From Pelomyxa schiedti (Eukaryota > Protista > Evosea): a stretch of DNA of 53,656 nt. A program made the translations under genes and the position numbers. Numbering within the stretch: the stretch's first letter is position 1; every line of letters starts with the position of its first letter. Positions 4,653 through 52,192 of the stretch are shown here, one piece after another. The stretch covers positions 1-53,656 of the forward strand of contig JAHLWZ010000900.1 of the NCBI GenBank assembly GCA_020536535.1, given 5' to 3'. Below the pieces are notes generated by a model, which made no database searches, had not been told where the DNA came from, and saw only the letters and a list, made by a program, of their open reading frames with translations.

Positions 4653-7600
4653 ATGCAAACAGCCAAGGAGGCACTGTCACAGGCGGGGATTGATGTAAAA
4701 CCACTTGATGACTTGGGCTTCAGTTTGGATTTGCCTCTGTCCGACTATTTCATGGTGCAACTCGCTGAAAATCGCGAGGACATGGACCCTTCGTACTACT
4801 ACGCCGCATACGACGTGGTGAAGCGTTGTCTTTTCGAAACACAAACAAGAAACGACGATGATGAGTTGGGTGAGAAGTTGTCAGGTTCCCTTTCACTTGC
4901 CACATAATTTCACAAGCAACATTTAAAAAAACCACACTCCAGGGAAAGGTTTGGAGCAGGTTTGTTTAAAAGAACACAGATATTGGGATGAGTGATGCTT
5001 CAGATTCGCTGTGTGGAGCACTGAAGACTCTGGGAAAACCCTGGACGGTGTCGGCTCTGCGGGAGGTTCTTTCTATGCCTGAAATTCCACCTCCACTTTT
5101 GCGGGTTTTCAATTCCAAAGGGGGGTGGCTCCCAAAGCTTCGGCGGAGATTGGTTCCTATGATTGACCCCGGAGGAACTCCGTCATCCAGAATAGAGTGG
5201 TTTCCTGCGAAGCTGACCGAGGCAGGATTCCAGGACTTGGAAGACCTTGTTGGTTTGGATTCTGGTGACTTTCAAAGACTTGCTGCATCACTGAGAGTTC
5301 CAGGGTGGACTGTGAACAAACTGCTGCAGAAAGCCAAGGACCTCGTTGGAAACGGAAAAAAAGTTCTGCACCACACACTGGAACACGCAACTGGGATCGA
5401 AAGCTTGATCACCACCGTCAAAGAGGCACATCATGGAAATACCGTCAACAAAGTCGTACTCACTTCACAGAAGGTTATGACTATGATCGACCTGATTTGC
5501 AGTGGCAGCTGCTCACCCAGCGGTGACAGCATCGTCTTTGATCAACTTGATCATTTTGCCCTTGTCACCATTGGGCTTTTTGGTGACTTGAAAACGACAA
5601 CCGACTTCCTGGTGCGAACTGGTGCTTTTCCTGAAGGCAAGAAACTCCCTGAGAACAATGGTCAGGCAGAGATACACGCCTTCACGACTCGGTTTGCAGA
5701 AGGTTCTGAAATGAGAGGCAATCCAGTGATGATCCTCGTGTTTGTTCCAGGGAGAACAAGCTTTTCCAACGTTCAGGAGTCTGATCCTGCGTGCCTCTTC
5801 TTGCGGTTTCTTTACAGTCTTTGTGACAGGATTTTCATGTGCTTGTCTGAGTCAATGCTCATTGACCTCCAACAAAGAAGAGGAGAAGAAGATAAAATAC
5901 GGGTTGTTGAAGGTCAAGTCGAGAGTACATCAATAAAAGAAGATTGCGAGTTACGGAAGGGCTTTGCTCAGAACCTCAGCCTCCCATTGGCTGGTTCAAA
6001 CTGGACTATGATCCAAGGTGAAAACAGGGTTGCCTTTGTCTGTTGTGAGGAAATCGATGAGAGCACAGTGAAGCACCCACTCAAAGGCCGGATTCCTGCC
6101 ACTGACTTCGCGTTGATGTTCAAGGTTTTGTTGGATGGGAGGGAGCTGTGCACCGACACCCTCCCTTATCTCGACAAGATGGCACTTCTTCGGTTGCTGA
6201 ATCCCACTGCTGCCCAATCAGTCGAGAACGGAGCAATCAAGAATCTCCAGAGGGTTGCAAAGGAACAAACGAAACTTATTCTCGAGCAACACTTCAAGCA
6301 CGAGTGGGAACTGTTGAATCTTGAAGCACCACGTTCACCGAGCGATTGTGGCGACTTGAACCAAACGAGGCTGAGAGATACTGTTGAGATATACCTTTCA
6401 AAGACAACCTCAGTCGTTCTTCTCTTTGAGGAGTTTTGTCCCAATAAAACCGCAAGTCAACTCCGTGATTTCTTGAGTCTCACAGAACATGAAATGCCGC
6501 AGAGAATCATTCAATTTGCGAGCGATCCACCAAGACCCCACGTTCCACTTTCCACTTTTTCGTCCTTGGTGGTGGAGCAACACTTCATCTCGGAAATCAC
6601 TTCCACTTTGAAAAAGAGATTTAAGAGCCAGTGCAAAGAAATCATCAAAGAAATACAAGCCTCTGTGCGCAGTAACCCTGATGAATTTTGCTGTGGTCCA
6701 CCATTTTCTTCAGTGCTGTGCACTGAAATTCGCAAAGAAACTCCACACACAAAGCCTGGAACAATTATCCTGACAACGCTCCAGCTACCAGGTGGCAAGG
6801 GAGACCCAACTGTCACCCTCACCATGGAGGTGGCTGGAAATCTGCCGCGACACATTAAGTTCACAGTTGTGGAACTAAATTTGGAGATAACCACTGATGG
6901 GCGTTCCAATGTCACTCTCGCACCTCCTTTTTCTTTTGAATCAGGTGTAGACTCCATTGCTGGTTGTTTCCTGTTGCCTGGAAGCAATGTGATGGTTGTT
7001 GGTGCTGAAGCTGCCAACCCTTCAAATCTTCTCATCTGCATACATCGTGAGGGAACCTGCCCTACGATTTCGAAACTGCCAAAGAAATGTCGCGTTTCCC
7101 ATGTCAACTTTTGTGCAACAACGAGAATGCTGGTGATGTGTTACTCTTCACCCGATTCCAGTGTATGTGCTCTGAAGTTCAACGACTCATATTCGAAATT
7201 TGACAGCCTGGGCAGTTTCCCGCTCGATGCCGCTCTTGCGAGTGTGAAGGGAATGTTCCCAGTTCCAGAAGGGCAAAAGGTTGTTGTCACATTCCCAACG
7301 GCAACCAAGCTCTTTGACTTCGAGAACAGAACTATTTCGGATTTGCCGCAATTTGATGGACCTGCATTTTTCCTCGGTCCAGAGTTATTCAAGTGCTTCG
7401 TCACTGTGAAACCGTCACCTCACCTCGTTTCAGGAACACCTGATGAGAAGGGGGAGTGGTGCGTTGTTTCTTTGAGGAGTTGCCTACCACCCTACCAAGT
7501 CCAGCACTGGGAAACAAACCTCCTGAATCCACACCTGTTGCCCTCAACACTTCTGGCAAATTTTCAGGTTGGGAACGGGGCACAAGAATTGCATCTGGTT

Positions 7601-10600
7601 CAATTCAACCCCATTTCTCATCAATTTTCCACAGTGGTCTTGTGTGCTGCCATGAAACAGACAAAGGTCTCACATCATATACCCTCACCAACTTGCCCTT
7701 CATGTTCACTTCTGGATTACCTGTGCCTCATGTTCGACAAGTTTCCAGCAGCAGCCGTTTGTGATTTTGCAATGGAAGAGAAACAACACAAGTTGACAGT
7801 TGTGGTGCCATCAGCAACACCCGAAGCAAAGAGACTGGTCTCCGTGCGTATCGGGGAATATAAAGACAAACTTGTTCTTTTTTGCAAAACACTTGGCACA
7901 GCTCACAAGTTCTTCATGGAACATGTGACTTGCAGCATTGATCAAGGATGGATTGACACCGAACGACTCAAGCCAACTGGATTTGGAACGTGGCTGAAAA
8001 CACTCATTTCACTAGTTCCCGTCCAAATCGCACGTGTTGACAACAACTGTTTGGTGTTGTGCAACAACAAGAGTTCTTCACAGGGAAACGATACGATTCA
8101 ATTCGCACAAACCCAGCACAGTGTTGCAGAGGGAATTTCGTTTGGACTCCTCGACGCGATTTTCTCATCATGCTTCAACAAACCAGTTCTTGTTGTCACA
8201 TCGATGGGAAAACAGAGCACAGGGAAGAGTTACACTCTCAACCACCTCTTGGGTGTTCTCTTTGACATCTCTGGTGGGAGGTGCACTGATGGTTGTTGGA
8301 TGAGCGTTCGTGAGAGGTCTGACTGCCTGATTGTGGCTTTGGATTTTGAAGGACTTTGTTCTCTGGAGCGCTCTGAACAGGAGGACATTCTACTTTCTAT
8401 TTTAAATGCCTCCGTTTCAAATTTAACACTTTTCAAGACTGAATTTACAATTGATAGGGCAACAGAAAAAACTTTCAGGAACTTCCAAGAGGGTGTTGGA
8501 ATGTTGAAAGGGGATGACAAACTCTTCAAGGGTTGTTTCACTCTCATGGTAAAAGATGTTCCTGAAAGGGATGTTGAAAGTTTATTTTCAGAATTCCAGT
8601 CCAAGTTTGATGAAATTGTGGAAACAAACCAGGGACAAAACTTCCTTTCTCAAATGTTTTCAGGGAAGTTCACAATGGTAATGTGTCCCCCACCCGTATC
8701 TCCTGGCTACAACGATAGCTTGAATTGCTGTGCCGAAATACTGCGGAATCAGACACCACAATTCCACAGTGGAGGAGAGTTCTCCTCGATGCTCAAGCTG
8801 ATTCTCGCAAAGCTCCACTTGAAAGACTGGTCTTCTCTCTTGGGACAAGACATGGTGATTATGGTTCGAAATCTTGAAGAGGATCTCCGTTTGGCTGTAT
8901 CTTTTGGGAGCAAGTCAGCAGCCACAGGTCACCAGGGACAACTTGTGAATTTGTCAACTGGTGAAGTTGTTCCCCGCCTCGATTCAATATCAATCTCCGG
9001 CCTCAGTATTCTCATTCCAAACTTCAATTTACAGGCAGATCACGAGGCAGATTTCACCAGGATACGGGAGGAGTTCAAGTCTTATTTTGAGAAGTATGTT
9101 CCAATACCACCAAAGCAGCGCGACTTCAGACTGTGGCACAGCCAATTCAGAGTTTTTGTGCACCAGGCCATTGAGAGCAGGAAGAGGCATGTGAAAGATT
9201 GGGTCTGTTCCAACATGAACAGGTGCCCCAGTTTCCACAATGAACCCAATCCTGCTCCCTTTTGGAACGGATCCCCGGAAGTCAAAGTATTTTTGATGAT
9301 AGTGGAGTCTTTGTTGCGAGGACTGGATGCACTCGAGGTTTGTTCAGACACATGCGCTCGGTGTTGGTTTCCGTGTTTACTTCTGTCTCGGCATTCAGGG
9401 CAACACAACTGCAATGGATCTCACAAGTGTGAAGCTGAGTGCACTTACTGCAAGTCCGCAGGCACGTGCGCCTACCAGGCCGGCCACGACGGCGATCACG
9501 ACTGCACAGGAGGCCACAAATGCAACAAGGAGTGCACTCTCTTGAGCAAAACAGGTTGCAACAGATTCTGCTCTCGTGTTGTCAATCATGAAGGTCCGTG
9601 CATGTGCAATTCGCAGCAACACCTGTGTGGTGAAAAATGCTCTGCTCGAGGGTCACAAGAACAGTGTGACAAGATGTGCACGCTCCCTTGCGATCATCAT
9701 CGAAAACACAACTGTGGAAGGGGGCACTGCCTGTGCAGTTGCAGTTTCCCAAAGTGCACAAATCCATGTGCATCTGCAGACCCTTTTCATGGGAGCGAGG
9801 CTTCAGCTTCAGCCTTCCCGCACTTATGTGGCTTTGAGCACGACTGCCCGTCAGAGTGCGAGGTGCCTGGCTGGTGCAGTGTTGGATACCTTCAGAAGGT
9901 GGAAAAAGTTTCATACAATGGGCACAGGCAAAATTTTGTTTATGAGAGGTCCACTGTTCCAGAACCAAGAAAGCTCCCTTGCTGCAAAAGGGTGCCGCCA
10001 GGGCAGCATACCCATGAGGGCTCTCACGCTTGCACTTATCCGCAATCTGGCCATCGTTGCAAATACTCGTGCCCAACCTGTGGTTATATTTGTGAACTCG
10101 AATTTGCACACCCTGGCAAGCATGCAGCGGCACACGGAAACATGATCAAAACAGGATTTATTTCCAGTGGCAAAGACATTGACCTTGATGGGCGATTGTA
10201 TGAAGCTGGCGAACCAGGTGTGGCCGAGATGTGCAACTTGTTCTGCAACAAACTTGGCAGACACATTCACATCCTCCCGTGCACAGCGGAGGGTAATGAG
10301 CCCTGTCCTCACACTGGAGAAGGAGGCAGAAGGCACGCCACAACAAAGTACCTGCCGGATCCGGATAATCCAAAGGACGAGCTCACACACGAAGGGTACT
10401 GGAATGCAATTGGTTTCTGTGACCCTTGCACACCTGAATACAGGGAGATTTTCAAATTGTGCAACTTTGAGTGTGGGGAAAATCGCCACACCGATCCCCG
10501 GTGCCGGTGCATGCTCCCTCTTTGGCATGCACCAAGCCAACAAACAGCAACAGTTTGCAGATGGAAAAGTTGGATACGCCACATCAGCTGGACACATATT

Positions 10601-11528
10601 CCCCAAGAAGCATGGTCCCCCAGAAAACATGCACATCGCTCTATGCCTCGACGCCTCCACGTTGAGACAAACTAACAGATGGGAAACTCTTGTGACAGGT
10701 GTTGAACAGTTCATTTCAGCCAGAAACAAACCAAAGGATGTTTACAGCATTGTTGAATTCAACGGTCAGGGATTTGTTGCCTGTGACAGGGTGTCACCTG
10801 AGCAAGTCCAGTCCAGACTCACCATGATGCAACCTCAATTTAGGCAAGACACACAGTTTTCAAGCGGTCTGTCAGTTGCGTATCGTCAACTCATGAGGAC
10901 TGACTGGTGAGTCTTTTTTTGCTTTCTTCTCGTTTGTCATTGCCGTGCTAACCGGTTAAATATCTGAGGAAATGACCCGAGGTTTTTTAACCGGTTAACT
11001 AAATTTAGTTTAACCAAGAAGCACTGGTCGTGCGTTGTGTTCACCAAAACAAAAAGGTTGGATTACCGTGCTGCTCTCATATTTATGTCTGATGGAGAGG
11101 ATGAGAACTCAGAATGGGAAAGCAGCATGCTGAACATCAAACGGCTCGCAGAGGAAAGAACGCTTTCCACTTACGTGATTGGAATTGGCGATGGCTTTGG
11201 CTCAAGAAAGCTGCAAAGTGTTGCCACAGTTGGGAACGCACAGTTTCTCACCGTCGACGCTGTGTGTGAAAATCTGACAGTGGTGCTAAAAGGAATAGAC
11301 GCCAAGGCAGAGGAAATGTACCAGAAGCTTGTTGATGCCGGCAATCCCTTGAGCAGGAGCCATCTTTCTGAGAGTTTTAGTCTGAACCAACGAGAACACA
11401 CAGACGAGTTGACGCTCTACAAACAACCCTCTGACCGTGAAGGAACGGCACTCCCCTTTTCTCGTCTGTTTCCACCCCCTTTCAATCCCCGGCCGGAATC
11501 TCCCCGTTGGGTCCCAAATCAATCATAA
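4653..11528 (+). CDS. Giant VLIG/GBP-superfamily GTPase paralog 1 (SAM-like / beta-rich / GTPase / Cys-His-rich / VWA); frameshift near 10530 before the VWA domain
   Basis: Exon 1 4653-4884 splices in frame to 4980. G1 GKQSTGKS (~8207-8230), G2 GGRCTDG, G3 DFEG. Cys/His-rich ~9340-10530. VWA pieces in ORFs 10167..10910 (LCLDAST) and 11037..11528 (LIFMSDG), joined by a gtgagt..aaaaag intron. Confidence 0.85.
10943..11027. mobile_element. ~85 bp palindrome-rich insertion (MITE-like) in the last intron of paralog 1
   Basis: Absent from the equivalent 44-nt intron of paralog 4; ends ccgtgct..agcactgg form an imperfect inverted repeat; internal palindromes taaccggtta (twice) and aactaaatttagtt. 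Confidence 0.5.
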
Positions 11529-11532
11529 TAAT

Positions 11533-25900: not shown

Positions 25901-26449
25901 CAGTATTATGTCACGCATCTCTGCTGAATCTAATTTGGTCATTGCGATAATTGACGCATTCCAGTCAGAAACTACCGTTGGAGGGCAGTGGGTGACTAGC
26001 AAAATCATTGACCAGAGCTTCCTCTTACACATTCCAAACCATAGATAAATCATTCTGGTGCATTTACCTATCGCCGAGGAACGGAGCAATTAGCGCGAGA
26101 CCAGCTTCCAACAGGTTATTACTTAGTTTTTTCTGCGAATCCTGGTTTGTTGTTTCTGCCTTGTTAATTCGTCCCAATCTTACAAACCAAAACAGGGGGC
26201 GGGGTGTTCACAAAAAGAATGTTCACAAGATGCTTCCAAGATGGTACTTTCCCAACAACAGACTATGGAGAGCAAACAGCTAACAAATGAACAAACAACA
26301 ACTGCACCACAGAGCTTTCGAGCGCACTTCCAGGGACACCCTTCGATGATATCGTGGATCGCGCAGTGACTCAGGTGCAGATACTCACATCTGGGTCTCA
26401 GTGTCCGTGTGTAACTGACACCGTCGGCAAAAGATTCGCTATTTTCTGA
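22930..26449 (+). CDS. VLIG/GBP-like GTPase paralog 2: compact, internally deleted form ending in a spliced pseudo-caspase domain
   Basis: Short exon 1 (MTGNDTLQVKLS) with the family splice donor; uninterrupted ORF to ~25400 with GKQSTGKS / GGRGTDG / DFEG; then small exons RALVIGSNY..NDTILVAD|FLKHTCHFTV, IFYFAGIAKQ..IAIIDAFQ, PGTPFDDIVDRAVTQVQILTSGSQCP..RFAIF* (stop ends 26449). One small exon near 26140 appears to have lost its AG. Confidence 0.75.
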
Positions 26450-36351: not shown

Positions 36352-36411
36352 GATTGATTAGGTGGTTTTAAGGGGGGCTGTGAGGGGGCTGAGCCCTGAG
36401 TGGGGTTTGGG

Positions 36412-37674
36412 CTATGGGGTGTTGAAGAGCCGGAAATTGGTTGGGATGGAGGGGGGGGGAGGTGGTGTGATAGGTGTTGGTGGTTTGGTGGTTAAGGGTA
36501 CTTGGGTTCGGTGGTCTGACTGTGGGATGGAAGAAGTGTTGGCTATTGGGGATGGTTTGTTTTGGGTGGGGATAGTGGGAGAAGTGTATTGAGGCTGTGT
36601 TACTTGGATTGTGGTTGGCTGGGCAGTGTAATTAGATGGGGCTGGTGGCCCTGTGGTTTTTTGGTAATGGCGGAGGCGATCTTTGCGATCGGCTTCAGAT
36701 TGAAAAGGGCAGCGTTGTTCGTCATGGTTGTTGGCTGAACATCTGGTGCATTTAAGTTTTGGGATGTGCCAGTAGATGGTTTTCCCAGAGAGAAATGTGA
36801 AATCCTTGGCTAGGAGTAGGTACTCTTCTACTGTAAAGAAATTTGCATGCCATTCTCCAGTCCAGGAGACCTTGGTCTTGGGTTTAGTAGTTACTTGAAG
36901 TTGTGCACTTGGCAAAGTAGTTTGGGTGGTGTTAGTTGACTTCTCTGTCTTCCTTGATTTCCGGGTCATAAACTTATCATAGGTACCGAAAAAGTCCGGG
37001 CCCACTTCCTGAAGGAGATTAATATCTCCTTCGTCTGGTGGGTCTACAATGAAGGTGACGGGAATTGGTTCTGGGAGCTTCTCCACAAAGGAGTACCGTC
37101 TACCATCGATGGAAAGTTCGATGAGTTTGTCAAGTTGGGTTCCTGCCAGCTCAAAGGATAGGGTGAAATGGTTCCTTTTTGGCACAAATTGGCATATTTT
37201 AACGCAGATGGGGAGGTTGGCTTCTATGAAATCAATGATCATTTGGGCTGTGTCGATGTTTTGTCTTACATCCTGACCAGGGGGAGGTCGGGAGTAAAGA
37301 AAAACTGTTGGCCAAGTGGGGGTTAGTTGGCAGTGTAGACGCTGAGCTTGTTCGAGGGATCGGCCTGTTCGAGGTTGACAGTCTGCACAAATCTCTCCCC
37401 CCACCAAGTATGTCCTAGCAATGCGGGGCTGTTCTTGTACTGGTGGAGTAGCGATTTCAGTTGGGCTGGGAGTGGTAACAGCCGGTTGCCTTAAAGGTGC
37501 CCCCAACCCCCACAGACCCTCTGGAAAGGGTAACTCTGGGGTTGGAGTGATAGGTTGTGCGTGGTTGGTAATTGGGTCTCCTTGTCTTTGTTGTTGTGGT
37601 TGTTGTTTTCGTGTTATTGTTGAGAGTGTGTGTTGGAGGTCCCGCGAAGCCTGTCTCAGGCTTTTTGAGTTAGG
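36412..37674 (-). CDS. LINE ORF1 (nucleic-acid-binding, zinc knuckle)
   Basis: CTRCSANNHDEQRC (CX2CX4HX4C); frame open from 37674 without an N-terminal ATG; stop lies 60 nt upstream of ORF2. Confidence 0.7.
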   Translation of the reverse strand, partial: PNSKSLRQASRDLQHTLSTITRKQQPQQQRQGDPITNHAQPITPTPELPFPEGLWGLGAPLRQPAVTTPSPTEIATPPVQEQPRIARTYLVGGEICADCQPRTGRSLEQAQRLHCQLTPTWPTVFLYSRPPPGQDVRQNIDTAQMIIDFIEANLPICVKICQFVPKRNHFTLSFELAGTQLDKLIELSIDGRRYSFVEKLPEPIPVTFIVDPPDEGDINLLQEVGPDFFGTYDKFMTRKSRKTEKSTNTTQTTLPSAQLQVTTKPKTKVSWTGEWHANFFTVEEYLLLAKDFTFLSGKTIYWHIPKLKCTRCSANNHDEQRCPFQSEADRKDRLRHYQKTTGPPAPSNYTAQPTTIQVTQPQYTSPTIPTQNKPSPIANTSSIPQSDHRTQVPLTTKPPTPITPPPPPSIPTNFRLFNTP

Positions 37675-38277
37675 TTAAAGTTTACTAGGGGTGTAGGTAG
37701 TGTTTGTTTATTGTTTTCAGTTGTGTGGGCAATTGTTTGTCGTCTTCCGTCGCCACGCTCCGCTAACATGTCGGAAGCTAGTTACCGGAACCGAAATTTG
37801 CAATTGTTTTCAGTGGGTTGCACTTGCTGCACATCTACAATGTTCTGTGTGATTCAGTTCAGATTCACAGCCTGAGGGCTGGTACTCAGGTTGTTCCCCC
37901 ACATAAAAAGACAATCAAGAAAACTCCTGTCTGGTCTTTCAAATCATTTAGAATGTGTCCCCGAATGTTCATGCTTCTGAGATGGCATTTCTCCTCATGA
38001 GCATTGACTCAGATGCAGATCCTGGGCACTGTCACTGTTTTCCACTGACACCACAGCCAAATTTTTGCTCTCTTCTGATTGAAACAACCTTCTCTTGGTT
38101 GGTGCCCCGTAATTTCAAAGCTCACTCGTGGTGGGTGCCTGCCTAACGGGACCCAAATATGCCAGTCCGAATGTTCAAGAACATCCACAAAAGCACAACT
38201 TGTAATAACAACAAAGTTGATGAGACTAAATTTGACACCTAATCCACCAGCGGGAAAGTTAATTCCTGGACGGAATC

Positions 38278-41200
38278 ATGCAAACAGCCAAGGAGGCACT
38301 GTCACAGGCGGGGATCGATGTGAAACCACTTGATGACTTGCACTTCGATTTGGATCTGCCTCTGTCCGACGATTTCATTACGCAACTCGCTGAAAATCGC
38401 CAGTTCATGGACCCTTCGTACTACAACGCCGCATGCGACGTGGTGAAGCGTTGTCTTTCTGAAAAACAAACAGGAAATGACGATGATGAGTTGGGTCGGA
38501 AGTTGTCAGGTTCCCTTTCACTTGCCACATAATTTCCAAGTAACATTAAAAAAACCACACAACGTTTGGAGCGGTTTTGTTTAACGGCTCACAGATATTG
38601 GGATGAGTGATGCCTCAGATTCGCTGTGTGGAGCACTGAAGACTCTGGGAAAACCCTGGACGGTGGCGGCTCTGAGGGAGTTTCTTTCTCTGCCTGAAAT
38701 TCCACCTCCACTTTTGCTGGTTTTCAATTCCAAAAGAGGGTGGGTTCTGAAGCTTCGGCGGAGATTGGTTCCCATGATTGACCCTGGAGGAACTCCTTCA
38801 TCCGAAATGGACTCGTTTCCTATAAAGTTGACCGAGGCAGGATTCCAGGATTTGGAAGACCTCATTGGTTTAGCACCAGAGGACTATGACAGACTAACCT
38901 CTTCAGTGAAAGTTCCAAAGGGTAGCGCCATCAAAGTTTTGGAAAAAGCAAAGACTATCGTTAGATACAGAAATACAGTACAACCTTGCACTCTGGAACA
39001 GGTCACTGAAATCTATGGGTTGATCACCACCGTCAAAGAGGCACACAATGGAAACACCGTCAACAAGGTCACACTTGTATCAGAGAAGGTTGTGACTCTG
39101 ATCAACCTGATTTGCAGTGAGAGCTGTTCACCCAATGGTGACAGCATTGCCTTTGACAAACTGGATCACTTTGGCCTTGTAACCATTGGGCTTTTTGGTG
39201 ACTTGAAAATGGCAACTGACTTCCTGGTGCGAACTGGTGCTTTTCCTCAAGACAAGAAACTCCCTGAGAACAATGGTCGGGCAGAGATACATGCCTTCAC
39301 GACCCAATTTGTGGAAGGTTCTGAAATGAGAGGTAAGACAGTGATGATTCTTGTCTTTGTTCCAGGGAGAACAAGCTTTTCCAACGTTCAGGAGTCTGAT
39401 CCTGCGTGCCTCTTCTTGCGGTTTCTTTACAGTCTTTGTGACAGGATTTTCATGTGTTTGTCTGAGCCAATGCTCATTGAGCTCCAACAACAAAGAGGAG
39501 AAGCCGAAACAACAAGGGTTGTTGAATGTGAAGTTGAGAAGACATCAATCAACGAAGACAGGTGTGAGTTCCAGAAGGGCTTTGCTCAGAGCCTCAGCCT
39601 CCCATCATTGTCAGATTCAACTTGGACAATGATCCAAGGTGAAAACAGGGTTGCCTTTGTCTGTTGTGAGGAAATCGAAGAGAGCACAGTGAAGCACCCA
39701 CTCAAAGGCCGGATTACTCCCAGTGACTTTGCATCGCAGTTCAAGGATTTTGTGGATGGGAGGGAGCTGTGCACTGACACCCTCCCTTATCTTGACAAGT
39801 TGGCACTTCTTCGGTTGCTGAATCCCACTGCTGCCCAATCAGTCGAGAACGGAGCAATCAAGAATCTCCAGAGGGTTGCAAAGGAGCAAATTAAACTGAT
39901 TCTCGGGCAACACTTCAAGCACGAGTGGAAACTGTTGGATCTTGAAGCACCACGTTCACCAAGCGATTGTGGTGGCGACTTGAACCAAACGAGGCTGAGA
40001 AATACTGCTGAGACATACCTTTCAAAGACAACCTCAGTCGTTTTTCTCTTTGAGGAGTTTTGTATAAATAAAACCGAAAGTGAACTCCGTGATTTCTTGA
40101 GTCTCACAGAACATGAAATGAAGCAGAGAATCATTCAATTTGCGAGCGATCCACCAAGACCCCACGTTCCACTTTCCACTTTTTCGTCCTTGGTGGTTGA
40201 GCAACACTTCATCTCGGAAATCAGTTCCACTTTGAAAAAGATATTTCAGAGCCAGTGCAAAGAAATCATCAAAGAAATACAAGCCTCTGTGTGCAGCAAC
40301 CCTGATGAATTTTGCTGTGGGTCATCATTCTCTTCGGTGCTGTGCACTGAAATTCACAAAGAAACTCCACACACAAAGCCTGAAAAATTTATCCTGGCAA
40401 AGCTCCAGCTACCAGGTGGCAAGGGAGACTCAAGTGTCACCGTTACCGTGGATGTGGCTAGAAACCTTCCGCGACACATTAAGTTCACAGTTGTGGAACT
40501 AAATTTGGAGATAACCACTGATGGGCGTTCCAATGTCACTCTCACACCTCCCTTTTGCTTTGACTCAGCTATATGCTCCCTCTCTGGTCGTTTCCTGTTG
40601 CCTGGAAGCAATGTGATGGTTGTTGGTGCTGAAGCTGCCAACCCTTCAAATTATCTCATCTGCATACACGGAGAGGGTACATGCTCTACAAGTTGGAAAC
40701 TGCCACAGAAAGGTAGTGTTTCACAAGTCAACTTTTGTGCAACAACGAGAATGCTGGTGCTGGTGATGAATTACACTTCACCCAATTCCAGTATTCATGC
40801 TCTGAAATTCAACGACTCATACTCAAAATTTTACAACCTGGGCAGTTTTCCGCTTGACAATAATTCCGCTCTTGCGAGTGTGAATGGAATTTTCCCAGTT
40901 CCAGAAGGGCAAAAGGTTGTTGTGACATTCCCAACAGTGGCCAAGCTCTTTGACTTTGAGCACAGAGTTATTTCAGATTTGCCACATTTTGATGGACCTG
41001 CACTTTTCCTCGGTCCAGAGTTCTTCGTCACTGTGAGGCCATCCCGTCCCGCCGTTGCAGGAACACCTGATGAGAGGGAGTTGTGTGTTGTTTCTGTGAG
41101 GAGTTGCCTGCAACCCTCCAAAGACCAGAACTGGGAAACAAACCTCCTGAACTCACACCTGTTGCCATCAACACTTCTGGCAAATTTTCAGTTTGGGGAC

Positions 41201-44200
41201 CAGGCACCAGAATCCCATTTGGTTCAATTCAACCCCACCACTGGTCACGTTTCCTCTGTTGTTTTGTTGGCTGCAATGAAGCAGACAAATTTCTCACTTC
41301 AGATGACCTCACAACCCACTCACTCTTCATGTTCGCCATTGGATTATTTGCGTATCATGTTCGACAAGTTCCCAGCAGCAGCCGTTTGTGATACAGAAAT
41401 GGAGGAGAAAAAAAAAACGCACAAGTTGACGGTTGTGGTGCCATCAGCAACACCCGAAGCAAAGAGACTGATGTCCAAGCGTCTTGAAGAATATAAAGCT
41501 AACCTTGTCGGTGTCTTCAAAATACTTGGCACAGCTGACAAGTTCTTCATGGAACATGTGACTTGCAGCATTGATCAAGGATGGTTTGAGACGGAACCAC
41601 TCCAACCAACAGGGTTTGGAACGTGGCTGAAAACACTCATTTCACTCGTTCCCGTTCAAATTGCACGTGTTGACAACAACTGTTTGGTGTTGTGCAACAA
41701 CAAGAGTTCTTCACAGGGAAATGATACGATTCAATTCGCAAAAACCCAGCACAGTGTTGCAGAAGGAATTTCATTTGGACTCCTCGACGCTATTTTCTCA
41801 TCATGTTTCAACAAACCAGTTCTTGTTGTCACATCGATGGGAAAACAGAGCACAGGGAAGAGTTACACTCTCAACCACCTCTTGGGTGTTCTCTTTGACA
41901 TCTCTGGTGGGAGGTGCACTGATGGTTGTTGGATGAGTATCCGTGAGAAGACTGACTGCCTGATTGTGGCACTGGATTTTGAGGGTCTTTGCTCTCTGGA
42001 GCGTTTTGAGCAAGAGGACGTTCTCCTTTCTGTGCTGAATGCCTCGATTTCCAACATGACACTTTTCAAGATAGGATTTAGCATCGACCGGGAAACGGAA
42101 AAAATGTTCAGGAACTTCCAAGAGGGTGTTGGAATGTTGAAAGGGGATGACAAACTCTTCAAGGGTTGTTTCACTCTCATGGTAAAAGATGTCCCTGTGA
42201 GGGACTTTCAGTCTTTACCTTTGGAACTCAAGACCAAGTTGCATGGAATTGTGGAAACAAATCAGGGAGAAAGCTTTCTTTCTCAAATGTTTATAGGGAA
42301 AATCAAAATGATTTTGTGTCCTCCACTTGGAACTCCTGGCTACAACGACAGCCTGAAGGAGTGCACCAAAATTCTACAGAAACAGATACCACAGTTCCAC
42401 AGGGGAATAGAATTCTCCTCAAAGCTCAAGCTGATTCTCGCAAAGTTGCACTTGAAAGATTGGTCTTCCCTCCAGGGACAAGACATGGTGATTATGATTC
42501 GAATGCTCCAAGAACAACTCCCTTTGGCCGTGAATTATGGTGAGTCACCCATGAGTCACCACAGGGGACTGGTGAATCTGTCAACTGGGGAAGTTGTTCC
42601 CCGCTCGGAATCAGTCACGATCTCCAGCACTAATATTCCCATTCCAAACTTGTCTCTCCTGGCTAATTGCCAGGCAGATGTAACGAGGCTCAGGGACGAG
42701 TTCAAGTCTCGTTTTGAGAAATTCTTCCCATCACCAAAGCAGTCAGAGTTCGTTTCATGGCGTAACCAGTTCAGGGAGTTTGTACACAAAGTAATTGAGA
42801 GCCGGAAGAAGCATGTGAATGATTGGGTCTGTTCAAACATAGAAGCATCATGTAAAACACCCCCTGAACCCTTTTTAAAGATTGTTGAATGTTCATTGCA
42901 AAAACTGGATGGACTTGAAGTTTGTGTAGGCACTTGTGCTGAGTGCAACTTGCGGTGTTTACTTCTACAGGCGCACTCAGGGCAACACAATTGCAACGGA
43001 TCTCACAAGTGTGAAGGTGAGTGCACTTATTGCAGATCCGCAGGCACATGTGCCTATAAGGCTGGCCACAATGGCCCTCATCAATGTGGAAGGGGCCATG
43101 CATGCAACAAGGGCTGCACTCTCTCAGGCAAAACAGGTTGCAACATATTGTGCTCCCTTATTGTCAATCATGACGGTCCATGCATGTGCAATTCACGGCA
43201 CCAGTGCGGTGAGAAATGCAATGCTCGGGCGTCAAAAGAACCCTGTGGTGGGATGTGCACGCTCCCTTGTGACGATCATCAAAAACACAACTGTGGAAGT
43301 GGGCACTGCCTGCACGGTTGCAGTTTCCCAAAGTGCACAACTTCATGTGCATCTACTGACCATTTTCACGGCGACGAAGCACCAGATTCACCTTTCCTGC
43401 ACGACTGTGGCAAAGAGCACGCCTGCCCCTCAGACTGTGAGATGCCCGGCTGGTGCGAGGTTCTGTACTTTGAGAAGGAAAAAGTTTCATTCAAGGGGCG
43501 CAGGCAAACTTTTGATTACGAGAGGAGGACTCTGCCTATACCAAAAAAGCTCCCTTGTTGTCAAACAGTTCCAGCAGGACAACGGGCGCACATAGGTAGT
43601 CACAGTTGCAACAAAAACCCTCATCGTTGCCAACAGTTGTGCCCAACCTGTGGTTATGTTTGTGAACTCGAATTTGGGCACCCTGACGAGCATCATGCAA
43701 AGCATGGAAATATGATCAAAACTCAGTTTGTTTCATGTGGCAAAAATATTGACCTCTCTGGGCGGTTGTATGAAGCTGGTGAACCAGGGCTTGCAGAGTC
43801 CTGCAGTTCATTCTGCAACAAACTCGGCAGGCACATTCACATTCTACCCTGTGAAAGACCAGGCAGTACCACCGGTGCTCACACAGGGGAAAGAGGCAGA
43901 AGGCACGCCACTGCAAAGTACTTGCCAGATCCAGAAACTCCCAGGGATGAGCTCACCCACGAAGGGTATTGGCATGCAATTGGCTTCCGCGATCCTTGCA
44001 TAGCTGACAACCGGGAGATTTTCAAATTGTGTAACTTCGAGTGTGGTGAAAACCACAGGGATGAGGGAAGATGTAAGTGCATGCTTCCTCTGTGGCATGA
44101 AAATTGTGCCTTACAAGTCAATGAGCAAAAAAAATTTGAAAGTGGAAAGCCAGATACCGGATATGCATCATCAGATGGTCACATATTCCCCAAGAAGCAT

Positions 44201-45018
44201 GGACCCCCAGAAAACATTCACATCGTTTTCTGCCTCGACGCCTCCACATCCATGTTGAGACGCAACAGGTGGCAAACTCTTGTGAGAGGTGTTGAACGGT
44301 TCATTTCTTCCAGAAATAGACCAGGGGATCTTTACAGCATTGTCTTGTTCTCTGGTGAGGGAACCGTTCGCTGTGACATGAAGTCGCCTCTCGACGCGAA
44401 AGCTATAATTGCCACGTTGCCCACATTTGGGCGAGACACGAAATTTTCAAGTGGTCTGTCAGTTGCATATCGTCAGCTAATGAAGACGAGATGGTGTGGC
44501 TTGTTCTCTTTTGCCATTGTTCACCAAAAACAAAAAGGGATGAGTACCGTGTTGCTCTCATATTTATGTCGGATGGAGAGGATGAGAACTCAGAATGGGA
44601 AAGCAGCATGCTGAACATCAAGCAGCTTGCAGAGCAAAAACCAAATGCGCTTTTAACTTTCGTGATTGGAATCGGCAATGGCTTCAACACCAAAAAGCTT
44701 CAAAGTGTTGCCACAGTTGGGAACGCACGGTTCCTCGCTGTTGACGCCGTGTGTGAAAATCTGGAAACAGTGTTGCAGAGGGTCGACTCCAACGTCAACC
44801 AACTAGTTGCTTTGATGGAACAGCCAGCACACATGGAGGCCACATCTGCATCTAGATCCACATCCAAATCCACAAGTTCATCCTCATCCGCATCCGCATC
44901 CGCATCCTCCTCTTCCTCGTCCTCATCCTTGTTCTCATCCACATCCACATCCACATCCACATCCACATCCACATCCACATCCACATCCACAGCCACATCT
45001 GATGGTGCTGCCTCATGA
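38278..45018 (+). CDS. Giant VLIG/GBP-superfamily GTPase paralog 4, apparently intact (~2203 aa): SAM-like / beta-rich / GTPase / helical / Cys-His-rich / VWA / Ser-Thr tail
   Basis: Exons 38278-38509, 38595-44493 and 44538-45018 sum to 6612 nt in frame. GKQSTGKS, GGRCTDG, DFEG; VWA with intact MIDAS DASTS, then DTKFSSGL and LIFMSDG. Confidence 0.9.
44941..44988 (+). repeat. (ACATCC) x8 coding microsatellite (Thr-Ser repeat)
   Basis: Read directly; lies in the last exon of paralog 4. Confidence 0.95.
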
Positions 45019-46199: not shown

Positions 46200-46300
46200 C
46201 GCGATCGAAGAACGATGTCAAACCACTTGAGGAACCGGGACTTCGACTTGGACGTCACCCCCTTCGTCCACGCAGGAAGCGGCAGTAGCCTAAGTTCAGG
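46200..46300 (+). pseudogene. Degenerate relic of family exon 1
   Basis: cgatgtcaaaccacttga..ggacttcgacttggacgt..gcaggaagcggc..tcaggt matches exon 1 of paralogs 3 and 5 in collapsed form. Confidence 0.65.
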
Positions 46301-46453: not shown

Positions 46454-49400
46454 ATGCAGACGGTTCGGGAGGCACTGTCGCGAGCGAAGATCGATGTGAA
46501 ACCACTTGATGACCTGGACTTCGACTTGGATCTGCCTCTGTCCGACGAACTAATCACGCAACTCGCTGACGCTTGCGAGTATGTGGACGCTTCGTATTAC
46601 GGCACCGTCTACCGCGTGGCGGTGAGCTACCTTGTCGAAACACAAGCAGGAAGCGGCGATGAACAGTTGAGGCAGAAGTTGTCAGGTTCCCTTTCACTTG
46701 CCACTAACTACCCCACAGCATTTAGGGCCTTCTCCAAACCTTTAGAATTGAAATATGAAACAGAAATTGGGATGAGTTGTGCCACAGACTCGTTGTGCCG
46801 AGCATTGAGGACACTGGAAAGGTCCTGCACAGTGGCAGCGCTGAGAGAACTTCTTTCTCTGCCTGAAATTCCACCTCCACTTTCGCAGGTTTTCAATTCC
46901 AAAGTTGGATGGCTTCTGAAGCTTCAGCGGAGATTCCTCCCCAGGGTCGACCCAGGAGGAACTCCTTCATCCAGAATAGATTCATTTCCAGGGAGGCTAA
47001 CCGAGGCAAGATTCCAGGATTTGGAAGACCTCGTTGGTTTGGATTCTGGTGACTTTCAAAGACTCACAGCATCACTGAAAATTCCAAAGGGAAGTGCATA
47101 CAAAGTACTGCAGCAAGCAAAGGCCCTTGTTGGAGAGGGAAAAAAAGTGCTGTACCACACACTGGAAAATGCATCTGGAATCTACAGCTTGATCACCACT
47201 GTCAAAGAGGCACAGAACGGAAACGTGGTGAATAAGGTCGCTCTTATCCCACAGAAGGTTGTTACTCTGATCAACCTGATTCGCCGTGGCAGCTGTTCAC
47301 CCAGTGGTGACAGTATTGCTTATCCTCGTGTTTGTTCCAGGGAGCACAAGCTTTTCCAACGTTCAGGAGTCTGATCCTGCGTGCCTCTTCTTGCGGTTTC
47401 TTTACAGTCTCTGTGACAGGATTTTCATGTGCTTGTCTGAGCCAATGCTCGCTGAACTCCAAAACGAAACAGGAGAAGCTGAAACAACAAGGGTTGTTGA
47501 ATGTGAAGTCGAGACGCCATCAATACAAGATAGGTGTGAGTTCGAGAAAGGGTTCGCTCAGAACCTCAGCCTCCCACCGTCAGATTCGCCTTGGAAAATG
47601 ATCCAATGTGATAACAGTGTTGGTTTTGTCTGTTGTGAGGAAATCAATGAGAGCACGCTTGTTTCCCCTATTAGAGGCCAGATCCCTGCCTATTACTTCG
47701 CGCCCTATTTCAAGGATTTGTTGCACGGTAAGGAGCTGTGCACTGACACCCTCCGTTATCATGACAAGTTGGCACTCCTTCGATTGCTGAATCCCACTGC
47801 TGCTCAATCAGTTGAAGATGGGAACAAGGGTTCAATCGAAACTCTTCAGAGGGTTGCAAAGGAACGAATTAAACTGATGCTTTCACAACACTTCAGGCAT
47901 GAGTGGGACCTATTGCAACTTGAAGCACCCCGTTCACCAAGTGATTGTTGTGCCGACCTGGATCAATCCAGGCTCACAAATATTGCAGAGACCTGCCTTT
48001 CCAAGACGACGTCTGTTATTTTTCTCTTTGAGGAGTTTTGCCCGCAAAAAACGCCAAGTGAACTCCGCGATTTCTTGAATCTCACAGAACAGGAAATGAA
48101 GCAAAGAATCATTCAATTTGGGAGTGATCCACCAAGACACCACGTGACACTTTCCACTCTTTCGTCATTGGGGTTCGAGCCACACTTCGCCTCGGAAATC
48201 ACTTTCACTTTGAAAGGGAGATTTAAGAGTCAGTGTAAATCACTTGCCACGGAAATACAAGCTGCTGCGTGCAGCAATCCCGATGAAATCTGCTGTGGGG
48301 CATCATTTTCTTTGGAGCTGGACACTGCGATTCGCAAAGAAACTCCACACACAGAGCCGGGAAAGGTGATCCTTACAATGTTCCAGCAGTCAACTGACAA
48401 GGCCAACCCACTTGTTAGTTTTCAGTGTAAGATGGCTAGAAAAGTTCCACGACACTTGAAGTTCACAGTTGTGAAACTAAATTTGGAGAAGATAACTGAT
48501 GGGCGTTCTTATGTCACTCTGGCGCCTCCTTTTTGTTTTGATTTGGAAGTGGCCACTGTTCTTGGTTGTTTCCTCTTGTCTGAAGGCAAGGTGATGGTTT
48601 TTGGTGCTGATACTGCAGACCCTCCTTCAAATTACCTCATCTCTGTTCACCGAGAGGACACATGCTCCCTCAGTTGGAAACTGCCAAAGAAAGGTTGCAT
48701 TTCCCATGTAAACTTTTGTGGAGCCACGAGAATGCTGGTGATGTGATACTCTTCACCTGTTTCCAGTGTCTGTGCTCTGAAATTCAACGACTCATACTCC
48801 AAATATGACAACCTGGGCAGTTTCTCACTTGCTGACGATGGCGATCTTGCGAGTGTGAAGGGAATTTTCCCAGTTCCAAAAGGGCAAAAGGTTGTTGTTA
48901 CATTCCCAAAAGTGGCCAAGCTCTTTGACTTTGAGACCAGAATTATATCAGAGTTGCCACAATTTGATGGTCCTGCACTTTTCCTCGGTCCGGAGTTCTT
49001 TGTCACCCTGAAGCCATCACTCCCTGTTATTTCCGGAACACCTGTTAAGTCATGCGTTGTCTCTGTGAGGAGTTGCCTGCAACCCTCTAAAGTTCAGCAC
49101 TGGGAAACAAATCTTCTGAACTCACACCTGCTGCCATCAACACTTCTGGCAAACTTTCCTGCTGGAGTTACATTTGGCACAATATCACCCAACTACTGGT
49201 CACTTTTCCACAGTGGTTTTGTGTGATGAGATGAAACAGACAAAGTTCTCACTTCAGATGGCCTCGCCACCAACTCGCCCTTTGTGCTCGCCATTGCATT
49301 ACCTGCATCTTATGTTTGACAAGTTCCCATGGGAGGACTTTTGTGGTGTGGAAGTGGAGGAGAAAACACACAAGTTGACTGTTGTGGTGCCATCAGCAAC

Positions 49401-52192
49401 ATCCGAAACAAAGAGACTGATCTCCCAGCGTCTCGGGGAATATAAAGCAAAACTTGTTGGTCTTTTCAAAGCACTTGGCGCAGCTGACAAGTTCTTCATG
49501 GAACATGTGACTTGCAGCATTGATCAAGGATGGATTGATACCAAACCACTCCAACCAACAGGGTTTGGAACGTGGCTGAAAACACTCATTTCACTCGTTC
49601 CCGTTCAAATCGCTCGTGTTGACAACAACTGTTTGGTGTTGTGCAACAACAATTTATCTTCACAGGGAAATGATCCGATTCAATTCGCACAAACCCAACA
49701 CAGTGTTGCAGAGGGAATTTCGTTTGGACTCCTCGACGCTATTTTCTCATCATGTTTGAGCAAACCAGTTCTTGTTGTCACATCGATGGGAAAACAGAGC
49801 ACAGGGAAGAGTTACACTCTCAACCACCTCTTGGGTGTTCTCTTTGACATCTCTGGTGGGAGGTGCACTGATGGTTGTTGGATGAGCGTTCGTGAGAGGT
49901 CTGACTGCCTGATTGTGGCTTTGGATTTTGAAGGACTTTGTTCTCTGGAGCGCTCTGAACAGGAGGACATTCTACTTTCTATTTTAAATGCCTCCGTTTC
50001 AAATTTAACACTTTTCAAGACTGAATTTACAATTGCTCAGGCAACAGAAAAAACGTTCAGGAACTTCCAAGAGGGTGTTGGAATGTTGAAAGGGGATGAC
50101 AAACTCTTCAAGGGTTGTTTCACTCTCATGGTGAAAGATGTTCCTGAAAGGATGTTGAAAGTTTATGTTCGGAATTCCAGAAACGGTTTAACAGAATTGT
50201 GGAAACAGACCAGGGAGAAGACTTCCTTTCTCAAATGTTTCCAGGAATGTTCACGATGATTATGTGTTCCCCACTTGGAACTCCTGGCTACAATGATAGC
50301 TTGAAGAGCTGTGCCGAAATACTGCAACAGCAGACACCACAGTTCCATAGTGGAGGAGAGTTCTCCTTGATGCTCAAGCTGATTCTCGCGAAGTTGCACT
50401 TGAAGGATTGGTCTTCCCTCCAGGGACAATATATGGTGATTGTTATTCGAAAGCTCCAGGAACAGCTCCCTCTGGCCGTAAATTATGGTGCTAAGTCCAC
50501 AGTTGAAGTACACCATGACCAAATTGAAACTTGGTCAACTGGGGAAGTTTTTCCACATACCGAATCAGTCACAGTCTCTGGCCTCAACATTCCCATTTCG
50601 AAGTTCAATCTGCAGGCAGATTGTGAGTCAGAACACATCAGGGTACGAGACGAGTTAAAGTCTTGTTTTGAGAAATACCTTCCAATGCCTCAGTCCAATT
50701 TTGGTTCATGGCACAGTCAATTCCGGGAATTTGTCACCCTAGTCATTGAGAGCCGGAAGAGGCATGTGATGGCTTGGGTCAGTTCAAACATGAAACCTGA
50801 ATGGAACCAATTCCCTGAAGCGCAAAACCTCCTTACGCAAGCGAATACTGCAATTCAACAGCTGGAAACACTCAAACTTTGCACAGACACTTGCACTGAG
50901 TGCCCCTTGTCGTGCTCACTTTTGCGTATACATTCAGGAAAACACTGCTGCTGGGGCTGCAGTATTCGGACTCTCACAGGTTTCAGACAGCCAACCTTTC
51001 ACATTCAAGTGGCTGAGGTGGAAAGACTGCTCGATTGGGTAAGGCTTCAGCACGTGGAATACGGCACCCACTTTACAATCAGCCGAGAGAAAGACACAGT
51101 TGAGGGGCCAGCTGATCCCCCTCTTGCAAGATTCATTGCGACAGAGATTTTCAGTGCGTTATTGAACAACGTGGCATTTTTTTACGTTCACCTCACAGTG
51201 AAAAGGTGTAAGAACCCTCCCTGCCCTAGGGTACCAATGCAGAGCCCTGGTAATCGGGAGTAATCTACAAAACAGCAGACACAGTGACCCGGCAGTCATT
51301 GCCGATGTTTGTATACTCCTTCTTCCTGGTTTTTTACTTATTGACAACAGTTTCTGCAAAACACTTGCCACATCACAGTGATGGAGGCACAAAAGTCGGC
51401 CATATGGAAAGGTACCCTGGAGCGATTCCTTGCCCCAATTGGTAATCCGGACTCTTCAAAGGTGTGAAAAATAACGCTCATCACCGAAACAACGCACTTG
51501 TGTTTGACGCGTTGGTTCCAGGTTGCAAGTATATTTTACTTTGCAGGAACCGCAAAGCAAGTTGGCTCACGCCAGCACCTGCTATTGGCTGATGGAAGTG
51601 CCAGTGTTTCATCATCCACAACGGACCTCATAATGCCACTCAACGACATCGTGTTCTGCATTGCCGCACAATCTCATTTGGTCATTGCGATAATTGACAC
51701 ATTCCAACCAGAAAATACCGTTGGAGGGCAGTTGGTGACTACCAATATATATATAATATCTACATAGCTTCAACTTACACCTTCAAATCATAGATAACGC
51801 ATTCTGGAGCATTTAGTTACCGCCCAGGCACCGAACAACTGGCACAAGACCGGCTCCCAACAGGCTGTTACTTGGTTTTGTCTGTGAATCCAGGTTTGTT
51901 GTTTCTCCCTTACTCGTCCCGATCTTACAAATGATTTAGGATGTGAAGCGTCCACGAAACGAATTTTCACAAGCAGTTTCCGAGAAGGTACTTTTCTTCA
52001 CTCAAAAACCAACAAAAAACAAATAGAAGAAACAAAACAACTCCACACTATATAGTGCTTTTGGGTGCGGCGCCAGGGACACCTTTTGACAACATTGTGG
52101 AATGTGCAGTGACTCAAGTGCAGATCCTCACGTGTGGGCACCAGTGTCCGTTTATCACTGACACCATCAGTCAAAGATTTGCTCTTTTCTGA
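46454..52192 (+). pseudogene. VLIG/GBP-like GTPase paralog 5 (pseudo-caspase type), disrupted
   Basis: Exon 1 MQTVREALSRAKIDVKPLDDL; deletion/frameshift ~47320, TGA at 48744-48746, frameshifts ~49160 and ~50150. GTPase motifs intact; only the first Cys cluster is kept; spliced caspase-fold exons end QRFALF* at 52192. Confidence 0.82.

What the first reader, a model, noticed from the sequence alone, without database searches (positions are those of the whole stretch)
4653..52192. Candidate protist immune/conflict locus: array of giant VLIG/GBP-like GTPases with swappable C-terminal modules (VWA versus pseudo-caspase)
Seen: five co-oriented paralogs share exon 1, a SAM-like segment and a nearly invariant P-loop core (GKQSTGKS, GGRCTDG, DFEG). 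They diverge abruptly after the helical region/first Cys cluster: copies 1, 3 and 4 continue into a long Cys/His region plus VWA, while copies 2 and 5 switch to an unrelated caspase-fold module. Established: GxQSxGKS/GRCT/DxEG is the signature of the VLIG(GVIN1/URGCP)-GBP-RHD3 group. Animal GBPs are cell-autonomous immunity GTPases that recruit caspase-4, and bacterial vWA-MoxR/GTPase-centred conflict systems combine NTPases, vWA domains and caspase-like effectors. Inference: a constant GTPase scaffold with exchanged outputs, evolving by birth-and-death, is a plausible uncharacterised defence or self/non-self system. From memory, VLIG-type+VWA proteins occur uncharacterised in fungi and oomycetes; I do not know of the caspase-fold fusion or the module swap being described.
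Basis: partly seen in the sequence, partly recalled or inferred. Interest (0 to 1): 0.92.

Follow-up and report, generated by a model that had tools for sequence, protein, structure and literature searches.

The report
Amoeba giant GTPases with dead-caspase tail
In the anaerobic amoeba Pelomyxa schiedti, a tandem array of unstudied giant GBP-like GTPases includes one intact gene (and one broken one) whose usual vWA tail is replaced by a catalytically dead but conserved caspase domain that the amoeba has also attached to two other kinds of NTPase, a layout that recalls decoy or regulator modules of immune systems but whose function is untested.

Summary
The window is a Pelomyxa schiedti scaffold. 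Five co-oriented paralogs are real. They belong to a widespread, uncharacterised eukaryotic family (beta-propeller, GB1/RHD3-fold GTPase, Cys/His repeats, vWA). It is neither Sey1 nor true GVIN/URGCP; the genome has those elsewhere.

Copies 2 and 5 end in a caspase-fold domain (closest fold MALT1) lacking both catalytic residues. It is in frame with the GTPase part, spliced in RNA and under purifying selection (dN/dS 0.24-0.32). It derives from Pelomyxa's own expanded, mostly active paracaspase-like family. Its dead subclade is also fused to a small GTPase and two MoxR ATPases.

Corrections: only copy 4 (vWA) and copy 2 (shortened, dead caspase) are intact. Copies 3 and 5 are broken, copy 1's vWA is out of frame, and copy 2 lacks most of exon 1. 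One capture plus gene conversion explains the tails better than repeated swapping; a third tail remnant lies before copy 4. No RNA contig bridges the junction, and no positive selection was seen.

A defence role (dead caspase as regulator or decoy) is plausible but untested. The scan noted a similar GTPase array with dead tails on another scaffold (s1-607371).

The parts
4653..11528 (+). Copy 1: exon 1, then a long exon (small helical domain, alpha/beta domain, beta-propeller, GB1/RHD3 G domain, helical region, Cys/His repeats). An 11-nt deletion at 10532 puts the vWA out of frame; the ORF stops at 10675.
   Evidence: deletion not checked against reads
22930..26449 (+). Copy 2 (NCBI KAH3744801.1, 1034 aa, 8 exons): intact short GTPase-pseudocaspase fusion. 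It lacks about 620 aa including the propeller; about 8 deletions, all in frame; G2 reads RGT instead of RCT.
   Evidence: RNA contigs over the pre-G region and spliced caspase exons
25211..26449 (+). Dead caspase module of copy 2: eroded SAM remnant, then caspase fold (His to Ile at 25806, Cys to Phe); six introns (25401-25452, 25551-25615, 25730-25778, 25992-26044, 26145-26195, 26244-26312)
26520..32657 (+). Copy 3: pseudogene with many frameshifts, a 93-nt tandem duplication and most of the vWA deleted
34600..37674 (-). Non-LTR retrotransposon (LINE) between copies 3 and 4: ORF1-like frame plus endonuclease/RT ORF2 that is cut short
   Evidence: PF03372, PF00078
37997..38184 (+). Remnant of a third caspase-tail copy: part of the last exon plus 3' flank, 75% identical to 52102-52290, directly upstream of copy 4
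   Evidence: (E=1e-30)
38278..45018 (+). Copy 4: the only intact full-length GTPase-Cys/His-vWA gene in the window; vWA MIDAS motif (DxSxS, T, D) intact; Ser/Thr-rich tail
46454..52192 (+). Copy 5: GTPase part broken at 47319, 48744, 49164 and 50149. Downstream, one open frame (50148-51153) runs from the helical region into the dead caspase module (NCBI KAH3744808.1, 542 aa, no G motifs).
50964..52192 (+). Dead caspase module of copy 5 (His to Thr, Cys to Phe). Five introns are seen spliced in RNA; the RNA uses the last acceptor at 52026, which gives a stop at 52053 and drops the last 43 residues.

Best explanation
A birth-and-death tandem array of a widespread family of giant GB1/RHD3-fold GTPases (propeller-GTPase-Cys/His-vWA). 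One member captured, by DNA-level rearrangement, a dead copy of the amoeba's own SAM-paracaspase-like genes. SHOWN: architecture, capture with six introns kept, loss of both catalytic residues, purifying selection on the dead domain and on copy 2's GTPase, transcription and splicing of the module, mosaic GTPase parts, and fusion of the same dead subclade to two other NTPase classes. INFERRED: like GBPs and atlastins the GTPase oligomerises on GTP binding. Full-length copies sense or coat a target through propeller and vWA. Copy 2, having lost both, presents a non-catalytic caspase domain that pairs with the 20 or more active paralogs (cFLIP-like threshold regulator) or soaks up invader inhibitors aimed at them (decoy). 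This would be an NTP-gated regulator in a cell-autonomous defence or symbiont-control pathway of an amoeba that hosts prokaryotic symbionts.
For: Fold: G domain Z=20.5 to GBP1, 20.0 Sey1, 19.2 atlastin; propeller Z 12-13; caspase fold closest to MALT1. The dead clade is separated from the active clade with 94% support; 5 of its 6 members sit behind an NTPase: this GTPase twice, a small P-loop GTPase once, bpMoxR twice. Module dN/dS 0.24-0.32, upper bounds at most 0.44. Copy 2's G domain dN/dS 0.24, like intact paralogs (0.23), with about 8 frame-preserving deletions. Spliced RNA for both modules. The family is patchy with lineage-specific expansions (AM fungi, agarics, conifers, oomycetes, acoel) and picks up RING, B-box, SAM and AAA domains. 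Kaur et al. [quoted passage not shown] GVIN1 coats bacteria (10.1101/2025.03.24.645074) and fish GBPs carry CARDs (PMC6400534).
Against: No functional or induction data. No RNA contig spans the junction. No positive selection: highest window 0.77. Copy 5 is a pseudogene with relaxed constraint on its branch (about 0.5 by three-way subtraction) and a truncating splice form. Copy 2 has lost the family-invariant G2 cysteine and a 10-residue stretch with nearly invariant NF, so it may not hydrolyse GTP. Active caspases of Pelomyxa also carry Ras and dynamin-like domains, so the NTPase bias of the dead clade rests on only three independent fusions.
Confidence: 0.45

Rival explanations
1. Passive fusion: a dead-caspase gene landed in a decaying tandem array. 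The module is kept for its own sake (transcribed from an internal start), while the GTPase halves of copies 2 and 5 are remnants held open by gene conversion.
For: RNA contigs with joints lie only on caspase exons. Copy 5's GTPase is broken, yet its module is spliced. Copy 2 lost 620 aa, exon 1 and invariant residues. One member of the dead clade (P0182) is modelled without a recognisable N-terminal domain. Conversion homogenises the G1 region (dS 0.12).
Against: Copy 2 is one open frame from the second exon into the first module exon, with about 8 deletions all in frame. Its unconverted N-terminal part (72-75% DNA identity to all others) still shows dN/dS 0.26. The C807 relative also runs in one 761-codon frame from P-loop to module. 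3' bias of single-cell libraries explains RNA lying only at the tail.
Confidence: 0.25
2. Non-immune role: the family is a membrane- or cytoskeleton-remodelling GTPase (atlastin/RNF112/SMG9-like), and the dead caspase is just a dimerisation or peptide-binding adaptor without any conflict function.
For: The fold is equally close to Sey1, atlastin, RNF112 and SMG9. Purifying selection throughout. Pelomyxa shows many unrelated domain fusions (earlier scan notes).
Against: No transmembrane segment or CaaX end. True Sey1 genes exist elsewhere. Patchy distribution, tandem expansion and fast pseudogenisation are unusual for housekeeping genes.
Confidence: 0.2
3. Actively swappable cassette system: recombination repeatedly exchanges vWA and caspase tails between GTPase scaffolds to diversify outputs.
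For: Copies 2 and 5 are rejected as sisters in three of four GTPase segments (AU p 0.0005-0.01). Their junctions differ. A third tail remnant exists.
Against: The module starts at the same point in both copies. Gene conversion of the upstream part explains the trees (copy 2 is 94-100% like copy 3 at 24900-25100; copy 5 is 96-100% like copy 1 at 49700-50100). All six full-length paralogs on other contigs carry vWA, and no caspase tail was found near them. Only two tail types are seen.
Confidence: 0.1

Closest known systems
GVIN1/VLIG-1 and URGCP (very large inducible GTPases; Pfam PF25683)
   Same: Giant proteins with a GxQSxGKS / GRCT / DxEG G domain of the GB1/RHD3 group; best Pfam hit; UniRef labels oomycete homologues 'VLIG-type G domain'.
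   Different: Scores about 40 bits, under the 55 cut-off, and only over the G1-G3 stretch, while real URGCP-type genes of this genome score 96-176. Adds a propeller, Cys/His repeats and vWA; no caspase fusion is described for GVIN1 in the paper read.
Guanylate-binding proteins (GBP1-7; zebrafish GBP-CARD fusions)
   Same: Same G-domain fold followed by helices (Z=20.5); domain accretion linking a GBP to caspase pathways (PMC6400534).
   Different: Here the fused part is a dead caspase catalytic domain, not a CARD; no CaaX; about three times larger; no interferon context.
Prokaryotic MoxR-vWA(-beta-propeller) ternary and GTPase-centred conflict systems (Kaur et al. 2020, PMC7159879)
   Same: [quoted passage not shown]
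   Different: Eukaryotic, single polypeptide, GB1/RHD3 GTPase instead of MoxR, no EADs, no operon or DGR; the dead caspase replaces vWA instead of following it. The paper does not mention GB1/RHD3 proteins.
cFLIP and MALT1-type paracaspases (from my own knowledge of their mechanism; MALT1 fold)
   Same: Paracaspase-like fold; a catalytically dead homologue beside active ones, as with cFLIP and caspase-8.
   Different: No death-fold or Ig domains; tethered to a GTPase; closest non-Pelomyxa relatives are environmental, bacterial-type caspase proteins.
Sey1/RHD3/atlastin ER fusogens
   Same: G-domain fold (Z 19-20).
   Different: PF05879 23-28 bits vs cut-off 42.4; true orthologs on C573 and C79; no membrane anchor.

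Membership tests
GB1/RHD3 (GBP/atlastin/Sey1) superfamily | GBP-like large G-domain fold followed by a helical region | tested here: met
   AlphaFold model of paralog P0004 (pLDDT 84): Z=20.5 to GBP1, rmsd 3.3 over 247 residues
GB1/RHD3 superfamily | Intact G1, G2 Thr, G3 DxEG, G4 | tested here: met
   Copies 1 and 4 intact; copy 2 keeps G1, Thr, G3 and KD but lost the invariant Cys and one residue
GB1/RHD3 superfamily | GTP hydrolysis and nucleotide-dependent oligomerisation | not testable with these tools
   Needs biochemistry
GVIN/VLIG/URGCP family proper | PF25683 above its 55-bit cut-off over the domain | tested here: not met
   28-42 bits over 60-75 positions; genuine members in the same genome score 96-176 bits
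Sey1/RHD3 orthologs | PF05879 above cut-off and C-terminal transmembrane hairpin | tested here: not met
   23-28 bits vs 42.4; maximum 19-residue hydropathy 1.7-1.9, none near the C-terminus
Caspase clan C14 | Caspase-haemoglobinase fold | tested here: met
   PF00656 full length, 20.6 bits (cut-off 21.4); Foldseek MALT1/caspases prob 1.00; 25-33% identity to active Pelomyxa paralogs
Caspase clan C14 (active enzyme) | His-Gly and Asp-x-Cys catalytic dyad | tested here: not met
   YFAGIA/IDAF in copy 2, YFAGTA/IDTF in copy 5, vs YFAGHG/LDACR in paralogs
vWA (MIDAS type) | DxSxS...T...D motif in frame with the GTPase | tested here: met
   Met for copy 4 only (PF13519 E=6e-9); out of frame in copy 1, mostly deleted in copy 3
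SAM domain (N-terminal segment) | Profile match to SAM | tested here: inconclusive
   Weak RadA-HhH and SHIP2/EphA2 SAM hits, E 0.4-0.5; no Pfam SAM; homologues P0007 and P0084 have Pfam SAM at the N-terminus
NTP-dependent conflict systems (Kaur 2020 type) | Variable effector slot filled with inactive copies of cellular enzymes | tested here: inconclusive
   One inactive caspase type, three independent NTPase fusions; vWA in all other family members of the genome
NTP-dependent conflict systems (Kaur 2020 type) | Hypervariable or positively selected sensor region | tested here: not met
   All windows dN/dS below 1; highest 0.5-0.8 just before and in the propeller; pairwise counting among converting paralogs has low power
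Immune/defence genes | Induction by or action against invaders | not testable with these tools
   Only unchallenged single-cell RNA contigs

The most novel reading that the evidence does not exclude
Pelomyxa has built a eukaryotic counterpart of bacterial NTP-thresholded conflict systems. A dead paracaspase module, recruited three times onto unrelated NTPases (GB1/RHD3 giant GTPase, small GTPase, bpMoxR), acts as a nucleotide-gated decoy or regulator for about 20 sensor-bearing active paracaspases (LRR, Sel1, MORN, ankyrin). The pan-eukaryotic propeller-GTPase-vWA family is then an unrecognised class of cell-autonomous immunity proteins.
Probability: 0.25. Interest if true: 0.85.

Novelty: new variant of a known kind. 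Interest (0 to 1): 0.62.

Why it matters
If right, it ties a GBP-fold GTPase physically to a caspase-clan domain in a unicellular eukaryote far from animals, showing that the GTPase-caspase coupling of animal immunity and the 'inactive enzyme as effector' logic of bacterial conflict systems arose again in an amoeba that must manage prokaryotic symbionts. Independently of the fusion, the propeller-GTPase-Cys/His-vWA family is present and often expanded in AM fungi, mushrooms, conifers, ferns, oomycetes and some animals. I found no paper describing it, and it can be tested in tractable hosts.

Tried and rejected
Alternative genetic code (table 6): not needed; the standard code gives 1900-2000 aa frames. 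Tiny introns as an explanation of the frameshifts in copies 1, 3 and 5: rejected; they are deletions without GT-AG ends. Assembly error in copy 5: DNA contigs of two runs match without gaps; the one G-insertion contig has the copy 1 sequence. The runs are from the source study, so this is not independent. Sey1/atlastin orthology: rejected. True GVIN/URGCP membership: not met. A degenerate second GTPase in the N-terminal alpha/beta domain: suggested by Atlas scores of about 0.8, not supported by hhalign (probability 0.1); left open. Caspase tails near the paralogs on C505, C974, C22 and C402: none. Positive selection: none. Sequence search of the module against PDB: no hit. The look-up of encoding contigs gave nothing for own-genome proteins. 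Ten paper searches found no description of the family or the fusion, but the library lacks most subscription journals.
Full report
SOURCE. The genome has 52,367,397 bases in 5337 contigs, matching the Pelomyxa schiedti assembly (52.4 Mb, 5337 scaffolds; PMC8887013). NCBI proteins from a 53,656-base contig are named Pelomyxa schiedti. The code is standard; introns here are mostly 40-76 nt.

THE ARRAY. Five + strand paralogs carry the G1 motif and align over kilobases at 74-82% DNA identity. At least eight more copies lie on four other contigs, four of them in tandem on C505. Copy 4 is the only complete gene in the window (2003-codon frame, then a short intron inside the vWA). Copy 1 is intact up to an 11-nt deletion at 10532 that throws the vWA out of frame. 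Copy 3 has many frameshifts and has lost most of its vWA. Copy 5 has three frameshifting deletions and a stop in its GTPase half. Copy 2 is a shortened but open gene: about 620 residues including the propeller are gone, about eight deletions are all in frame, and most of exon 1 is missing. A LINE sits between copies 3 and 4.

WHAT THE GTPASE IS. An AlphaFold model of paralog P0004 residues 670-1500, built on 109 homologues (pLDDT 84), shows a beta-propeller (Z 12-13 to Kelch, NHL and WD40 propellers) and a G domain closest to GBP1 (Z=20.5), Sey1 (20.0), atlastin (19.2) and SMG9 (19.1). The full layout is: small helical domain (SAM/HhH-like, unproven), alpha/beta domain, helical region, propeller, G domain, helices, Cys/His repeats, vWA with intact MIDAS. 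It is not Sey1: orthologs score 92-122 bits elsewhere in the genome, against 23-28 here. It is not a true GVIN/URGCP either: those score 96-176 bits, against about 40 here. Homologues with the same G-plus-vWA layout occur in oomycetes, conifers, ferns, liverwort, Galdieria, Mesostigma, dinoflagellates, an acoel, a sponge, AM fungi and agarics, often as many paralogs per genome. Some add RING, B-box, C2, SAM or AAA domains. All are named hypothetical or automatically; the 'TRIP12' names are annotation transfer. None of about 300 listed homologues has PF00656.

THE CASPASE MODULE. In copies 2 and 5 the reading frame runs without a break from the GTPase helical region into the first module exon, and NCBI models both as fusions. 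The copy 2 module matches PF00656 end to end and folds like MALT1 and caspases. The catalytic His is Ile or Thr and the Cys is Phe. Pelomyxa has 20 or more paralogs, most with an intact YFAGHG/LDACR dyad, a SAM domain just upstream, and LRR, Sel1, MORN, ankyrin-PARP_reg, Ras or dynamin-kinase N-termini. A search of 1.84 billion representatives finds the two window proteins first, then, as far as they were looked up, Pelomyxa proteins, then environmental bacterial-type caspases. Six members lacking the catalytic Cys (five of them also the His) are split from the active ones with 94% support. Five sit behind an NTPase: the two here, a small P-loop GTPase on C807 (99% clade with ours; one 761-codon frame) and two bpMoxR AAA+ ATPases. 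All six introns are shared between copies 2, 5 and the C807 gene, so the module moved as DNA. Pairwise dN/dS is 0.32, 0.24 and 0.31, with upper bounds at most 0.44. Split by branch (my arithmetic) this is about 0.20 for copy 2, 0.26 for C807 and 0.53 for copy 5: the dead domain is maintained, less so in copy 5.

TRANSCRIPTION. A single-cell RNA run of the source study has error-free contigs over five spliced introns of copy 5's module and one spliced contig from copy 2's module. A second run has short unspliced contigs on the GTPase halves, which could be DNA. No contig bridges the junction, so the fused transcript is not shown. The last intron of copy 5 is spliced at 52026, not 52055 as in the NCBI model, which gives a stop at 52053. 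DNA contigs span copy 5's junction without differences, so it is not a scaffolding artefact.

SWAP OR CAPTURE. The module begins at the same point in both copies, but copy 2 joins it at 25174 and copy 5 about 120 codons later. The GTPase halves are mosaics: copy 2 is 94-100% like copy 3 just before the junction, and copy 5 is 96-100% like copy 1 across G1-G3. A clade of copies 2+5 is rejected in three of four segments, and the G1 region has dS of only 0.12, so the 'invariant core' is partly gene conversion. A remnant of a third tail lies at 37997-38184, just before copy 4; the order 'caspase tail, then vWA-type copy' therefore occurs twice. The simplest history is one capture, tandem duplication, continued conversion of the GTPase part and decay of most copies. 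Repeated exchange is not excluded but is not needed. No window shows dN/dS above 1. Copy 2's own GTPase part is as constrained as its intact relatives (0.23-0.35), although it lost the invariant G2 Cys and ten residues after G4.

MECHANISM. From established knowledge, GBPs and atlastins dimerise on GTP, paracaspases are activated by dimerisation, and dead homologues such as cFLIP tune active ones. In bacterial MoxR-vWA systems about 70% of effector caspases are inactive and are read as dominant-negatives, binders or decoys (PMC7159879). I infer that copy 2 is an NTP-gated, non-catalytic partner or decoy for the amoeba's active paracaspases within a defence or symbiont-control pathway (0.45). 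Rivals: passive fusion with a separately transcribed module (0.25), a non-immune adaptor role (0.2), an active swap system (0.1).

VERDICT. The family is deposited but undescribed in the papers searched. The fusion and the repeated recruitment of a dead caspase onto NTPases appear new. Limits: the RNA and DNA runs come from the assembly's own study; joined spliced models of my own were not searched, exons being searched by reference and NCBI's deposited proteins used for folds and trees. New variant of a known kind; interest 0.62.

Noticed in passing
window 34600-37674 (-): LINE-type retrotransposon with an ORF1-like frame and an endonuclease/RT ORF2 cut short; it lies just upstream of the caspase-tail remnant.
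   Followed up: partly
window 46184-46255 (+): Short frameshifted duplicate of the start of exon 1, about 270 nt upstream of copy 5.
   Followed up: no
P0004 residues about 200-450 (copy 1 about 5500-6000): The N-terminal alpha/beta domain draws GBP/RHD3/G-domain clusters in the Atlas at about 0.8 and has a G1-like strand-loop, so it may be a degenerate second GTPase; hhalign did not confirm this.
   Followed up: partly
G000:C795 and C601 (P0185, P0194; L056, L057): Two eukaryotic genes with a bacterial conflict-type bpMoxR AAA+ domain fused to the same dead caspase module; two further MoxR genes lie on C119 and C120.
   Followed up: partly
L033 (G000:C807:9165-12365; P0180): The closest relative of the module ends a small P-loop GTPase gene and is followed at once by another GTPase gene of the same type, a second tandem GTPase array.
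   Followed up: partly
L036-L053: At least 18 intact SAM-paracaspase-like genes with varied LRR, Sel1, MORN, ankyrin, Ras or dynamin-kinase N-termini: an undescribed caspase expansion in an archamoeba, nearest to bacterial-type caspases.
   Followed up: partly
P0001 (G000:C505 about 184000-193000): NCBI models a 3'-5' exonuclease (PF01612) after the vWA of one paralog; it may be a real third tail or a merge with the next gene.
   Followed up: no
G000:C802, C769, C454, C1219: True URGCP/GVIN-type GTPase genes also exist in Pelomyxa (44-176 bits).
   Followed up: no
window 2978-3418 (+) and 15486-16034 (-): Flanking ordinary genes: an RNase PH domain exon and a MAP10_N-like exon; multi-exon minus-strand genes fill the gap between copies 1 and 2.
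   Followed up: no
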